DNA of 64,000 bases, from IMG/VR virus record IMGVR_UViG_3300001782_000005, positions 62,001 through 126,000 of that record; one strand, given 5' to 3'. The notes under the pieces were generated by a model. That model was given only the letters and a program-made list of their open reading frames with translations. It was not told the origin of the DNA and ran no database searches. Shown here in pieces: positions 8,865 to 50,872 of this stretch. The first letter of the stretch is position 1, and the number at the start of each line of letters is the position of its first letter. The position numbers were made by a program, and so were the translations under genes.

Positions 8865-8942
8865 TGGTCGGGTAGGACAGATTTGAACTGCCGACCCCCT
8901 GCTCCCAAGGCAGGTGCGCTAACCAGACTACGCTACTACCCG
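8865..8942 (-). tRNA. tRNA-Pro(UGG)
   Basis: Cloverleaf; anticodon arm CCTGC-CTTGGGA-GCAGG; TTCAAAT T-loop; encoded CCA. Confidence 0.95.
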
Positions 8943-12509: not shown

Positions 12510-13058
12510 TTAATCCAGTAATGGGGTTGTAGCATTAATGACCTCTAGACGTGCACTAATATTGTCGAAGAGATCATTCCAAACTCTTAGTTGTTTATTT
12601 TTCTCCTTTTCATCATACATATGCTCAACTCGTAGGGTTTCTCCAGCTGCAACATGAGCTCCTCTCATGCCCATCTGACCCAATCTAGTTTGAGCATAAT
12701 TTATATTTAGTGCTTCATAGGTTCCTGTAATGAGATTCTTCATAGATCTGTCAAGAAATAGAAGATCACTAATTGTATATTCTACTCCCTGGATCTCTAC
12801 AATTGTTTGTAAATTTGTTCTTTCAATTCTATTTTTTAACTTGAGGGCCTCCTTATGGAGATCAATATTGGATTGGATAAGCGCTTGTACCTCTTTCTTC
12901 TGAGACTTTTCATCTCCAAAAAGGGGTCGTTCATTTGAAACAATAGAGGCATATTGATTAATACTTCGAATATTGCTTTCCATCCTCTTCTGAATAACTC
13001 CTAATCTTTTTAACCCCTCAACTATCATCATTGGTCTCTCTTCTTGTTTTTCCGTCAT
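12510..13058 (-). CDS. DIP1984-like coiled-coil protein
   Basis: IVEGLKRL..IQKR...IERTNLQT...TISDLL...ISARLEVINATT pattern; likely start MMIVE. Confidence 0.6.
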   Translation of the reverse strand: MTEKQEERPMMIVEGLKRLGVIQKRMESNIRSINQYASIVSNERPLFGDEKSQKKEVQALIQSNIDLHKEALKLKNRIERTNLQTIVEIQGVEYTISDLLFLDRSMKNLITGTYEALNINYAQTRLGQMGMRGAHVAAGETLRVEHMYDEKEKNKQLRVWNDLFDNISARLEVINATTPLLD

Positions 13059-13512
13059 CCTTCCCTCCGATCTGCTTGCTTTTATATTTGGTCCCGAACT
13101 TCTCCTCCCAGTAGTCCAAACCCTTACAAATCATCCCCCACAAAAAGGTTTTATTTGTTGGTATACCATTCCTCATGAATTGGCGTTCGAGTTGCTCAAG
13201 GTATTCATCCCTAACATAGTTAACTTCACAAGTTGGACAATGAATTACTTTAACAGCTTTGAGAGTCATCGTCCCTTCAATAACAGGCACATCAATGGAC
13301 CTTCTTCGTGCTTCATGTGGTCCCCCAGGACATTGACATTTTTTAACTGTTAATTTTACCTTTTCTCCCTTCTCAAATACCTTTAAGAATGGACTTTCAC
13401 ACTCATGGTCATGAACATAAAGAGATATCTCGCCTTTTACATGGTTGATTGTTGCATCAGTAATAAATAAGTCTTCACCACAATTACATTTCACCTTATA
13501 TTCAATTTTCAT
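13018..13512 (-). CDS. zinc-ribbon protein (YgiT/MqsA-type finger)
   Basis: CNCG...HDHEC and CQC...VIHCPTCEVNY. Confidence 0.55.
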   Translation of the reverse strand: MKIEYKVKCNCGEDLFITDATINHVKGEISLYVHDHECESPFLKVFEKGEKVKLTVKKCQCPGGPHEARRRSIDVPVIEGTMTLKAVKVIHCPTCEVNYVRDEYLEQLERQFMRNGIPTNKTFLWGMICKGLDYWEEKFGTKYKSKQIGGKDDGKTRRETNDDS

Positions 13513-13524
13513 TAATTTCTCCTA

Positions 13525-14508
13525 TGATTCACTAGAGAATGCTGGATTACTTTTTTTGCCTTGGTTCACTTTTTATAATAGGTTTCTAGGCTACAGAGGT
13601 TCACTAATTGGGGTTGGTTTTAGTAACACCCCCGGTTCACTATATATTGCTGGTTTTTTGGTTGTGTGTGCTGGTTCACTCTACATCTGTGGACTTCTAT
13701 CTGCAGTTGGTTCACTACTACCACACGGTTTTCTTAATTTTGTTGGTTCACTTGGCACTGTAGGTTAACTGCGGTCGTCTGGTTCACTTTGGTCGTATGG
13801 TCTCCTGGGACATCACGGTTCACTAATTTATACTGGATTCTTCTATGTCATGGTTCACTGTTTTACAATGGGTTCCTTTCATCGAAAGGTTCACTAATCA
13901 GTGGTGATTAATTTTCGTGCCTCAGGTCCACTATTATCATCTGGTTTTCTCACCCCGACGTGGTTCACTTTCGTTTTTTGAATACTGATGTCTTCTGGTT
14001 CACTACCTTAACCTGGTTTTCTTTGGGCCCCTTTGGTTCACTTATACTACTGGTTTACTATACTACATTGGTTCACTCCACTCAGGTGGTTTACTGCAGG
14101 CATGTGGTTCACTCCTCAACATCGAATCCTTAGTCTATACTGGTTCACTTTGCCCGTCAGAATTTTTACATCGAGTTGGTTCACTGCGTTGCGATGGGTT
14201 ACTCCACCAATCTGGTTCACTTAAGAGTAGTGGTTTCTAATCAGTAGTGGTTCACTCTCTATTGTTGAGTTTTTTAACATATTCTGGTACACTCGTTTAA
14301 ACTGATTTCTTTGCCTTCCTGGTTCACTATTGGGTCCTGAGTATTTTTGCGTCTGGTTCACTTCCTCCGCCTAGGGTTAGTGGATAGCATTGGTTCACTC
14401 GGCATCGTTGGAATAATCTAAGATACTGGTTCACTAAAACTGACTGGTTTTTCTTTTCAAAGTTGGTTCACTCCCGATATTTGGTTTACTGTTATGGGCT
14501 GGTCCACT
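13525..14508 (-). repeat. TIGR-type tandem interspaced guide RNA array: 27 units of ~36 nt with two repeats and two ~9-nt spacers per unit
   Basis: GGTTCACT (3 variant forms) at 28 positions from 13526 to 14501, spacing 34-39 nt (mean ~36). On the minus strand: edge AGTGAACCA, degenerate loop repeat ~AGWAAACCA, unique spacers. Confidence 0.88.
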
Positions 14509-14766
14509 CATAATGTTGAGCAATCTTTCTGCATTTTCCAGATTTGACATACTTTTTATATTTTCATAATCCTTCTCAACTTGCTCTAGTAAATTTCTCA
14601 AGATCTTCATAAGCATAGGTCTTGTAACTGGATGTGGATGTTCCATATGATTATGAACTAATTTTCCTTCGCCATTTATTGCTACAATAATATTTATAAC
14701 TTTTACTGTATGTGCATTGTTTAGATTATCACGAAAAATATCTATATGAGGCTCTTTCTCTATCAT
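14434..14766 (-). CDS. hypothetical 110-aa protein whose 3' end reads into the array
   Basis: Start moved to MIEKE (AAGGA RBS) because the upstream part of the ORF is tRNA-His. Confidence 0.5.
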   Translation of the reverse strand: MIEKEPHIDIFRDNLNNAHTVKVINIIVAINGEGKLVHNHMEHPHPVTRPMLMKILRNLLEQVEKDYENIKSMSNLENAERLLNIMSGPAHNSKPNIGSEPTLKRKTSQF

Positions 14767-14779
14767 TGACTTCCTTTTC

Positions 14780-14859
14780 TGGGGTGTCGGGTGGGAATCG
14801 AACCCACGCTCAACAGGGGCCACAACCCTGCGCCCTTATCCAATTCGGGCCACCGACAC
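14780..14859 (-). tRNA. tRNA-His(GUG)
   Basis: Acceptor GTGTCGG/CCGACAC, C73, CCA; anticodon arm CAGGG-TTGTGGC-CCCTG. Confidence 0.93.
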
Positions 14860-15378
14860 TTATTCTACTGCATTCTTCCAGTCCGAAACTAGCTTCTTAT
14901 GATTCAATATATCTATCTCACATTTCGGGCAGTTTACACCATGTTCATCCAAACTTCTTAAGACATCTTCTAGTGCTTTATTTCTGTTCCTCAATTTCCG
15001 AAAAGCTGCCATAGGATTTGCTACTGGACAATCTTCCTCATGCCCATAAGAATCACACCTTTCAAGACACTCCATGTCTTCACTAGTATCCGTCAGATAC
15101 TGTTTAAGAATATCCAATTCTTTCTTCAATTTACTCATTGGATGTTTTGGGCATATCTCAATATGTTGTTTTAAAACTTCTGCCATAGAAACAGGTACTT
15201 CATCCTTCGGCCCATACCTATGACCACAATATACACAATTAACATACATTCCAGACTGAAGATCGTTTATCCATTGTTGTATCTGACTAACTTCATTTTT
15301 CCAGTCTCTAAGGATATCATAAACCATATCCCCAGAAGTTCCCCTTTCGGCTAATTTATACCACTCTTCAATATTCAT
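14860..15378 (-). CDS. zinc-binding hypothetical protein
   Basis: CVYCG...HIEICPKHP and CPKC motifs; start moved to MNIEEW behind GAGG. Confidence 0.6.
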   Translation of the reverse strand: MNIEEWYKLAERGTSGDMVYDILRDWKNEVSQIQQWINDLQSGMYVNCVYCGHRYGPKDEVPVSMAEVLKQHIEICPKHPMSKLKKELDILKQYLTDTSEDMECLERCDSYGHEEDCPVANPMAAFRKLRNRNKALEDVLRSLDEHGVNCPKCEIDILNHKKLVSDWKNAVE

Positions 15379-15797: not shown

Positions 15798-15920
15798 TTA
15801 GCAATATGGACAATACCACTGAGGACTGAACCTCTTACAGCGATCACAATATGTATAATGGCCCGTAAGTGAAAGTTCTAATTTCCTAAGTAGTCTGCCC
15901 AACCAACTTAGTTCATGCAT
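15798..15920 (-). CDS. 40-aa zinc-ribbon microprotein
   Basis: MHELSWLGRLLRKLELSLTGHYTYCDRCKRFSPQWYCPYC; start overlaps HNH stop. Confidence 0.45.
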   Translation of the reverse strand: MHELSWLGRLLRKLELSLTGHYTYCDRCKRFSPQWYCPYC

Positions 15921-16449
15921 CGCTTTCCATTTTCGAGCACTCACGCCATATCTCCTTAAGTAAGTCATGAATTCCATATTCCTTCATTCTTAACGTAAGA
16001 AATTCAGAAATAGTTGGTTGATATGGTTGCTTCTTTGGATATATATTTGCCTCTCTTGGAGATCTGTCCCCCTTCTTGTTATTACAGTCTTTACAAGAAG
16101 TTAGACAGTTATCAAAATTGTTTTGACCTCCACGAGATTTTGGGATCATGTGATCTATTGTTAAATTTCCTCTGTCTGTGCTACCGCAGTATTGACAAGT
16201 CCAATTATCCCTAATCAACACATTCTTTGGTCTAAAAGGGACTTTGTTCTTGTAAATCGAGCGAACCAATTTTAGCAGTCGCAGAATCAGAGGAAGAGTA
16301 ATAACAATAGTTCGCCCAACGTTGGCAATTTGGCGGTCACCGTACTTCAAAACTTCTACTTTGTTTTGAATCATTAGGCATACCGCCCTTCGCCAACGAA
16401 GAGTACACAAGTAAGTGTAGTCGGCGTTAAGCAGCAGCACACGTTCCAT
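15913..16449 (-). CDS. HNH endonuclease (McrA-like)
   Basis: VLLLNADY N-terminus; RDNWTCQYCG...TIDHMIPKSRGG...CKDCNNKKG. Confidence 0.92.
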   Translation of the reverse strand: MERVLLLNADYTYLCTLRWRRAVCLMIQNKVEVLKYGDRQIANVGRTIVITLPLILRLLKLVRSIYKNKVPFRPKNVLIRDNWTCQYCGSTDRGNLTIDHMIPKSRGGQNNFDNCLTSCKDCNNKKGDRSPREANIYPKKQPYQPTISEFLTLRMKEYGIHDLLKEIWRECSKMESDA

Positions 16450-16661: not shown

Positions 16662-16736
16662 TGGACACTACGCCTGGATTCGAACCAGGGATCACGGATT
16701 TGCAATCCGTTGCCTTAACCTCTTGGCCACGTAGTG
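16662..16736 (-). tRNA. tRNA-Cys(GCA)
   Basis: Acceptor CACTACG/CGTAGTG, U73, CCA; ACGGA-TTGCAAA-TCCGT. Confidence 0.95.
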
Positions 16737-16740
16737 TATT

Positions 16741-16817
16741 TGGCACGCACGGAGGGACTCGAACCCCCAACCGCAGGTTTTGGAGACCTGTGCTCTTCGC
16801 AATTGAGCTACGTGCGC
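16741..16817 (-). tRNA. tRNA-Trp(CCA)
   Basis: CAGGT-CTCCAAA-ACCTG; TTCGAGT T-loop; CCA end. Confidence 0.93.
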
Positions 16818-50796: not shown

Positions 50797-50872
50797 TGCA
50801 CCCAGGTGATTAACCTCAACGGACCGCTAAAAAATGCAGCCCTCCCAAGCGACTTACATGCTCAAGTCTACA

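What the first reader, a model, noticed from the sequence alone, without database searches (positions are those of the whole stretch)
13018..15378. The array has no recognisable Tas effector: orphan array or new partner protein
Seen: none of the ORFs in 64 kb shows a Nop/IS110-like RNA-binding domain that I can recognise. The gene directly upstream is an unknown 110-aa ORF (14434..14766) whose last ~25 codons are the first two array units. Downstream lie a Zn-ribbon gene and the DIP1984-like gene with its RNA. Inference: the Tas protein is encoded elsewhere in the genome, or the guides load or decoy a host or competitor Tas in trans, or a non-Nop neighbour is the partner. The last two would, to my knowledge, be undescribed.
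Basis: partly seen in the sequence, partly recalled or inferred. Interest (0 to 1): 0.75.

Follow-up and report, generated by a model that had tools for sequence, protein, structure and literature searches.

The report
Second guide-RNA array, effector encoded far away
The repeat array is a real TIGR guide-RNA array, but it is not an orphan: the same 277-kb jumbo phage genome encodes one TasA effector about 142 kb away beside a second array with the identical repeat, so this is a known kind of system laid out in two places.

Summary
The array is real. It has 27 units of about 36 nt at window 13525-14508, read on the minus strand. The edge repeat is AGUGAACCA, the loop repeat is A-rich (consensus AGAAAACCA), and there are two spacers of about 9 nt per unit. 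This is the same AG-N4-CCA format as the characterised array of Salicola phage CGphi29.

However, the window is part of a complete 277,131-bp phage genome. That genome has exactly one Tas gene, at genome 218135-219298 (minus strand), outside the window.
- It scores 116.5 bits against NCBIfam TIGR_Tas_endo (cut-off 100).
- Its best solved relatives are TasR 9MTY and TasH.
- It has no nuclease domain, so it is a TasA.

Directly upstream of tasA lies an array of about 40 units with the identical edge repeat. Related phages keep both arrays at the same two places, and homologous guides turn up in either array. This supports one guide pool serving one effector.

The layout (a conserved distal array inside a small operon) is not described in the papers I could search. 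The guides' targets remain unknown.

The parts
13525..14508 (-). Dual-repeat TIGR array ('W-array'). It has 27 units of about 36 nt plus a terminal edge repeat. The edge repeat is AGUGAACCA, the loop consensus is AGAAAACCA (degenerate), and the two spacers are about 9 nt each.
   Evidence: Searches give the parsing and statistics. One search shows that the generic AG-N4-CC x3 pattern hits only this array and the Tas-adjacent array, and only on the minus strand. One search shows the same repeat format as the SpTasH array.
14434..14766 (-). 110-aa ORF directly upstream of the array. It has a conserved core of about 87 aa (motif HxHMxHPxPxTRP). Its variable tail is the translated first two array units. 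Its function is unknown.
   Evidence: no relatives outside the clade. Searches show homologues at the same place in four relatives at 36-55% identity. One search gave an AF2 model with pLDDT 52, which is not usable.
13018..13512 (-). 164-aa Cys/His-rich protein directly downstream. Its ribosome-binding site follows the last edge repeat (AGTGAATCA-TAGGAGAAATTA-ATG). Residues about 58-140 resemble a YgiT/MqsA/YokU-type zinc finger, which is a lead only.
   Evidence: Searches give YokU at E 0.004-0.005, below the cut-off. One search is the Atlas structure lead. Searches show that all relatives found have the array upstream.
14780..14859 (-). tRNA-His (GUG). It lies 13 nt upstream of the 110-aa ORF on the same strand and is probably part of the same transcription unit.
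14860..15378 (-). 172-aa Cys/His-rich ORF of unknown function. It abuts tRNA-His. It is present in one relative (L008) and absent in another (L007), so it is not tied to the array.

Best explanation
The window's array is the second, distal array of a dual-repeat TIGR-TasA system of a 277-kb jumbo phage. The only Tas gene is a 387-aa TasA: a Nop domain with insertions and no HNH or RuvC domain. It sits at genome 218135-219298 (minus strand), immediately after an array of about 40 units with the same edge repeat.

Most likely mechanism:
1. The minus strand of the window is transcribed through tRNA-His, the 110-aa ORF, the array and the 164-aa gene.
2. TasA dimers made from the distant gene bind each unit through the CCA (box C) and AG/UG (box D) motifs of the edge and loop repeats.
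3. TasA cuts within the edge repeats using its C-terminal Tyr/His loop and keeps 36-nt tigRNAs.
4. Each tigRNA's two 9-nt spacers pair with opposite strands of a DNA target.
5. Lacking a nuclease, the complex blocks transcription or replication of that target rather than cutting it.

Shown here: the array anatomy, the identity and uniqueness of TasA, the identical repeat at both loci, conserved synteny of both arrays, and guides shared between them.

Inferred: transcription, processing by TasA in trans, and a repressor-type action. The targets are unknown.
For: TasA identity:
- NCBIfam NF052498 TIGR_Tas_endo scores 116.5 bits against a cut-off of 100, and it is the only hit in the genome.
- phmmer against PDB gives TasR 9MTY at 3e-13 and TasH at 1e-5.
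- The AF2 model has pLDDT 90. Its best Foldseek matches are TasH 9W04 and TasR 9MTY, followed by IS621 and Nop5.
- The Nop alignment starts at about residue 38, so there is no room for a nuclease domain.
- Y376 aligns with the catalytic Y289 of SpTasH, and a His follows at position 385 (role of Y/H from PMC13421893).
- There is no paralogue.

One system:
- The edge repeat AGTGAACCA and the loop consensus are identical in both arrays, and loop conservation is similar (AG..CC kept in 12/27 and 12/37 units).
- Relatives keep both arrays at syntenic sites with 15-54 units.
- 11 of 74 homologous guide pairs sit in the other array type.
- Spacers differ less (0.11 per site) than loop repeats (0.20 per site), while flanking DNA is mostly 70-80% identical.

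Expression (weak): an RNA library holds two short contigs on the array (one 98.8% identical over 164 nt) and none on the flanking genes.

Function by analogy: TasA proteins act as RNA-guided repressors (bioRxiv 10.64898/2026.09.09.750476).
Against: - There is no direct evidence that this array is transcribed in an infection or processed by TasA. The RNA-library contigs could be carried-over DNA.
- No sigma-70-like promoter and no terminator stand out around the array. Published arrays usually end in a terminator.
- Loop repeats are degenerate: only 12 of 27 units keep both AG and CC. Some units may therefore not load.
- No target was found in the phage's own genome, in relatives' loci, or for one conserved guide in the viral collection.
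- The complex prediction was not folded, so it is no evidence either way.
Confidence: 0.85

Rival explanations
1. One of the conserved flanking proteins (the 110-aa ORF upstream or the 164-aa zinc-finger protein downstream) is a dedicated partner or accessory of this array. It might be a new effector, or a factor that works with TasA-tigRNA complexes from this array only.
For: The order 110-aa gene, array, 164-aa gene is kept in all relatives found, at 63-80% identity for the 164-aa protein. The array starts inside the 110-aa ORF and mostly ends at the ribosome-binding site of the 164-aa gene. That is the same position tasA holds after the other array.
Against: - Neither protein matches any RNA-binding, Nop, IS110 or nuclease family.
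- The 164-aa protein's only lead is a YgiT/MqsA-type zinc finger.
- The Tas-adjacent array has neither gene next to it.
- The repeat is identical to TasA's own, and guides move between the arrays.
- In L015 and L008, extra DNA separates the array from the 164-aa gene.
- Synteny within one phage clade is expected by descent alone.
Confidence: 0.08
2. The distal array is a decaying duplicate of the Tas-adjacent array, left by a rearrangement and no longer used.
For: Loop repeats are degenerate and unit lengths vary from 34 to 39 nt. No promoter or terminator was recognised.
Against: - The Tas-adjacent array is just as degenerate.
- Edge repeats are nearly invariant.
- The array is kept at the same site in phages whose flanking DNA has diverged to mostly 70-80% identity, with different unit numbers (15-43).
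- Many spacers are identical across those phages.
- Array sequence appears in an RNA library.
Confidence: 0.05
3. The guides are made to load or decoy a Tas protein of the host or of a competing phage, not the phage's own protein.
For: Nothing specific. The only supporting point is that no Tas gene is adjacent.
Against: The repeat equals the one next to the phage's own tasA. In published systems repeats are locus-specific and co-vary with their Tas (PMC12045711).
Confidence: 0.02

Closest known systems
Dual-repeat TIGR-TasA systems (for example FpTasA of Flavonifractor plautii; Faure et al. 2025, PMC12045711)
   Same: [quoted passage not shown] Repeats carry CCA and AG/UG box motifs, and the loop is A-rich. 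The effector is a solo Nop-domain protein of 300-400 aa, and the system is phage-borne.
   Different: In the papers I read, arrays are described upstream, downstream, flanking or inside tas, and surveys looked only around tas loci. Here a second array of 27 units lies about 142 kb from tas. It sits inside a small operon of unrelated genes, has no terminator, and has more degenerate loop repeats.
SpTIGR-TasH of Salicola phage CGphi29 (NC_020844; PDB 9W03/9W04)
   Same: Same 9+9+9+9 unit and AG-N4-CCA repeat format (AGCGAGCCA / AGACAACCA against AGUGAACCA / AGAAAACCA). The Nop domains are homologous, and the C-terminal PxY..EKLG..H processing loop aligns.
   Different: SpTasH carries an N-terminal HNH nuclease and cuts DNA. 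The phage protein here has none. SpTIGR is a single array of about 11 units directly after tasH, with a terminator.
Ralstonia jumbo phage phiRSL1 ORF034 with its downstream array (NC_010811)
   Same: It is the only cultured phage in the held collection with a homologue of this TasA (31% identity over 90% of the length). It is also a jumbo phage and has a long degenerate dual-repeat array.
   Different: phiRSL1 has a single array next to the gene and none elsewhere in its 231 kb. The record annotates the gene as a transposase and does not annotate the array.
CRISPR loci with a second array far from the cas genes that shares the repeat (own knowledge, by analogy)
   Same: One effector set serves several arrays with the same repeat placed at different genome sites.
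   Different: The protein family, guide architecture and processing are all different. No spacer-acquisition genes are known for TIGR.

Membership tests
TIGR array (dual-repeat type) | Two alternating 8-12-nt repeats separated by spacers of about 9 nt, giving units of about 36 nt repeated many times | tested here: met
   27 units, of which 24 are 35-37 nt. Spacer A is 9 nt in 18 of 27 units and spacer B is 9 nt in 19 of 27. The definition is from PMC12045711.
TIGR array (dual-repeat type) | Box C (CCA) and box D (UG or a co-varying dinucleotide) present in both the edge and loop repeats | tested here: inconclusive
   Edge repeat: AG, UG and CC are invariant, and CCA is kept in 81% of units. 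Loop repeat: AG in 18/27, CC in 17/27, both in 12/27. The Tas-adjacent array shows the same degeneracy.
TIGR array (dual-repeat type) | [quoted passage not shown] | tested here: not met
   No terminator-like site lies near 13525. The last edge repeat is followed by the ribosome-binding site and start codon of the 164-aa gene. The paper describes this feature as typical, not obligatory.
TIGR-Tas system | A Nop-domain Tas protein encoded next to the array | tested here: not met
   There is no match in the window with five different queries. The nearest Tas gene is about 142 kb away.
TIGR-Tas system | A Tas protein in the same genome whose own adjacent array has the same repeats | tested here: met
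   NF052498 scores 116.5 bits against a cut-off of 100. There is a single locus. The adjacent array of about 40 units has the edge repeat AGTGAACCA.
TIGR-Tas system | The array is transcribed and processed into 36-nt tigRNAs bound by Tas | not testable with these tools
   The only evidence is two short contigs on the array in one metatranscriptome. The complex prediction was not folded.
TasA (as opposed to TasH or TasR) | Nop domain alone, with no N-terminal HNH or RuvC domain | tested here: met
   Homology to TasR and TasH starts at about residue 38 of 387. The model shows only loops and one short helix before residue 34. There is no HNH or RuvC Pfam match; the HNH matches belong to other proteins.
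Dual-repeat Tas (self-processing) | C-terminal loop carrying the Tyr/His processing pair | tested here: met
   Y376 aligns with Y289 of SpTasH and is nearly invariant in 48 homologues. H385 follows. Catalysis itself was not tested.
Orphan array (no cognate effector in the genome) | The complete genome lacks any Tas gene | tested here: not met
   The genome is complete by direct terminal repeats and contains one TasA gene.

The most novel reading that the evidence does not exclude
The distal array may be more than spare guide storage. It could be a TasA-dependent switch for its operon, or its two conserved flanking proteins could be TIGR accessory factors.

The array begins inside the 110-aa ORF, upstream of that ORF's stop codon, and ends at the ribosome-binding site of the 164-aa gene. 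Cutting at the edge repeats would therefore remove the stop codon from the upstream message and free the downstream message. Expression of both genes would then be tied to TasA levels.

Guides conserved across diverged phages would in that case be hard-wired regulators rather than an adaptive memory.
Probability: 0.12. Interest if true: 0.6.

Novelty: new member of a known kind. Interest (0 to 1): 0.3.

Why it matters
The finding's main claim, a guide array without an effector, does not hold, so there is no new RNA-guided protein here.

What remains is a well-documented natural example of one TasA serving two arrays placed about 142 kb apart in a jumbo phage, with about 64 parsed guide units (27 in the window array and 37 of about 40 in the other) and relatives for comparison. 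Published surveys searched only the surroundings of tas genes, so such distal arrays would be undercounted.

The clade also bears on an open question about TIGR, namely where spacers come from and what they target. Many guides are conserved across phages whose flanking DNA is only about 70-80% identical, and guides move between the two arrays. This looks more like inherited, selected guides than rapid acquisition.

Tried and rejected
- Pfam Nop (PF01798) and Transposase_20 (PF02371) found nothing in the whole genome. These models are too far from this TasA. The protein-level query SpTasH and NCBIfam NF052498 were what found it.
- Self-targets. All 54 well-formed guides were tested against the phage's own genome, in both possible strand geometries with gaps of 0-3 nt. 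Counts were the same as for mispaired control guides.
- Targets in other sequences. 222 guides of this phage and four relatives were tested against the genome and relatives' loci at up to 1 mismatch. One hit was found against four in the controls.
- Target of the most conserved guide (unit 18) in the viral collection. There were 10 and 15 scattered hits with unrelated flanks, which is chance level for 18 nt.
- Structure of the 110-aa protein. pLDDT was 52, so no fold search was made.
- Atlas look-alikes of the 110-aa protein were only unnamed viral proteins.
- Complex of the TasA dimer with one array unit. The job was not folded by the tool, so it is no evidence.
- A sigma-70 promoter and terminator scan around the array found nothing above the shuffles.
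- No phage record matched the locus at DNA level.
- No RNA run holds this exact DNA. Only one related metatranscriptome was offered.
Full report
**What is in the sequence**

Between window 13525 and 14508 the + strand carries GGTTCACT every 34-39 bases. There are 24 exact copies in about 1 kb. The whole 277-kb genome has 54 copies on that strand and 4 of the reverse complement, where about 4 per strand are expected by chance.

Read on the minus strand, each unit is:
- an edge repeat AGUGAACCA;
- a spacer of about 9 nt;
- an A-rich loop repeat with consensus AGAAAACCA;
- a second spacer of about 9 nt.

There are 27 units plus a terminal edge repeat.

I fetched the experimentally characterised array of Salicola phage CGphi29 for comparison. 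It has the same 9+9+9+9 format and the same AG-N4-CCA repeat shape (AGCGAGCCA / AGACAACCA), on the coding strand of tasH. Faure et al. name CCA 'box C' and UG 'box D' and describe an A-rich loop repeat (PMC12045711).

A generic pattern (AG-N4-CC three times at 18-nt spacing) hits the genome 22 times. All hits are on the minus strand and all are inside TIGR arrays. So the array is real, it is a dual-repeat TIGR array, and the minus strand is the sense strand. All neighbouring genes are also on the minus strand.

None of the following finds anything inside the window:
- Pfam Nop (PF01798) and Transposase_20 (PF02371);
- the NCBIfam TIGR-Tas model (NF052498);
- the SpTasH protein;
- the phage's own TasA;
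- a 48-sequence TasA profile.

The 110-aa ORF at 14434-14766 does run through the first two units. AGT GAA CCA reads Ser-Glu-Pro, and its stop codon overlaps the third edge repeat.

**The effector is elsewhere in the same genome**

The window is bases 62001-126000 of a complete phage genome of 277,131 bp with direct terminal repeats.

SpTasH, used as a protein query, hits one 387-aa ORF at genome 218135-219298 on the minus strand. The evidence that this ORF is a Tas protein is:
- It scores 116.5 bits against NCBIfam NF052498 'TIGR-Tas system RNA-guided endonuclease', cut-off 100.
- It is the only such match in the genome.
- Against solved structures it matches TasR 9MTY (3e-13) and TasH (1e-5).
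- A model built from 48 homologues has pLDDT 90. Its best Foldseek matches are TasH and TasR complexes, then IS621 recombinase, then archaeal Nop5.
- It belongs to a large family: 1966 cluster representatives at E <= 0.001, mostly 300-400 aa, with the homology starting near their N-termini.

Homology to TasR and TasH begins at about residue 38. No HNH or RuvC domain is present, so it is a TasA. Y376 aligns with the catalytic Y289 of SpTasH, and a His follows at position 385 (role of these residues from PMC13421893).

**The two arrays belong together**

Directly upstream of tasA, at genome 220837 down to 219311, lies an array of about 40 units with the identical edge repeat and the same loop consensus. 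Its last edge repeat is followed by the ribosome-binding site and start codon of tasA.

The window array ends the same way, at the ribosome-binding site of the 164-aa gene. Loop-repeat conservation is similar in the two arrays: AG and CC are both kept in 12/27 and 12/37 units.

Related phages keep both arrays:
- One relative (TasA 83% identical) has 54 units before tasA.
- Four relatives (164-aa protein 63-74% identical) have 15, 43, 20 and 30 units between homologues of the 110-aa and 164-aa genes.

Of the 27 window units, 11 have a recognisable homologue in another phage. In 11 of 74 homologous pairs across phages, the two members sit in different array types. For example, unit 36 of this phage's Tas-adjacent array is unit 3 or 4 of the distal array in three relatives.

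Spacers of homologous units differ at 0.11 per site and loop repeats at 0.20 per site, while flanking DNA is mostly 70-80% identical. One pool of guides, one repeat and one Tas gene give the simplest reading: TasA serves the window array in trans.

**Expression**

No run holds this exact DNA as RNA. One leaf-litter metatranscriptome has two short contigs that lie on the array: 13533-13696 with 2 differences in 164 nt, and 13888-13969. It has none on the flanking genes. This is compatible with an abundant array transcript but is weak, because DNA can be present in RNA libraries. No promoter or terminator stands out.

**The neighbours**

- The 110-aa ORF is a real gene. Homologues sit at the same place in four relatives at 36-55% identity, with an invariant M-x-H-x-x-P-x-T-R-P stretch and a variable tail made of translated array. 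It has no relatives outside the clade, no family match, and a model too poor to use.
- The 164-aa protein is clade-specific. Its only lead is a YgiT/MqsA/YokU-type zinc finger in residues about 58-140.
- The 172-aa ORF is missing in one relative.
- The Tas-adjacent array has none of these genes beside it.

I cannot exclude that the flanking proteins cooperate with the system, but nothing points to it beyond synteny within one clade.

**Function**

By analogy with tested TasA proteins, which bind DNA with tigRNAs and repress transcription without cutting (bioRxiv 10.64898/2026.09.09.750476), the most likely action is RNA-guided binding of foreign or host DNA.

I found no targets:
- The phage's own genome gives the same counts as mispaired controls.
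- So do the loci of its relatives.
- The viral collection gives chance-level hits for the most conserved guide.

**Comparison and novelty**

This is a TIGR-TasA system, a known kind. The only unusual feature is the layout. A second array is conserved far from tas, embedded between unrelated genes, starting inside a coding sequence and lacking a terminator.

The two survey papers looked only around tas genes, and none of the texts I searched mentions orphan or distal arrays. The one cultured phage with a homologue, Ralstonia phage phiRSL1, has a single array next to the gene.

I rate this as a new member of a known kind, with modest interest.

Noticed in passing
outside the window: genome about 220893-221037, minus strand (L010:8890-9046:-): A tRNA-like RNA of about 145 nt lies just upstream of the Tas-adjacent array. 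It has a 10-bp acceptor-like stem, a GGGUUCGAUUCCC T-arm and a long extra arm (MFE -61.5 kcal/mol, z -4.2). A hairpin with a U-run follows, and then the first edge repeat. ARAGORN and Rfam do not call it. The window array's operon likewise starts right after tRNA-His.
   Followed up: partly
L018:3932-6340 (Ralstonia phage phiRSL1, NC_010811 13180-15578): ORF034, annotated 'transposase', is a TasA homologue (31% identity). The 1.4-kb 'empty' stretch after it is an unannotated TIGR array of about 37 units. No second array exists in that genome.
   Followed up: yes
window 15913-16449 (-): A stand-alone HNH endonuclease of 178 aa (Pfam HNH 3e-16; partial matches to the HNH part of IscB and Cas9). 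It is kept 1.4-2.7 kb upstream of the distal array in relatives. No link to the nuclease-less TasA is shown.
   Followed up: partly
Its only matches are PHROG 1491 ('tail fiber protein', 7e-8) and weak Pfam hits. It overlaps the end of the 164-aa gene by 41 nt.
   Followed up: partly
window 50799-50851 (-): Match to the Rfam DUF3800-VI RNA motif (44.1 bits, gathering score 35).
   Followed up: no
window 8865-8942, 16662-16736, 16741-16817 (-): Three more tRNA genes (Pro, Cys, Trp) lie on the same strand as the array, interspersed with many small Cys-rich ORFs.
   Followed up: no
L006:5367-5665: In the relative's Tas-adjacent array, a 298-nt stretch holding a small ORF with its own ribosome-binding site is inserted between two edge repeats. 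This shows that these arrays tolerate embedded genes.
   Followed up: no
outside the window: genome about 1300-26600: Dense short repeats of ACTACAAC-type words (Thr-rich coding repeats by their look) occur in several stretches. They are unrelated to the TIGR arrays.
   Followed up: no
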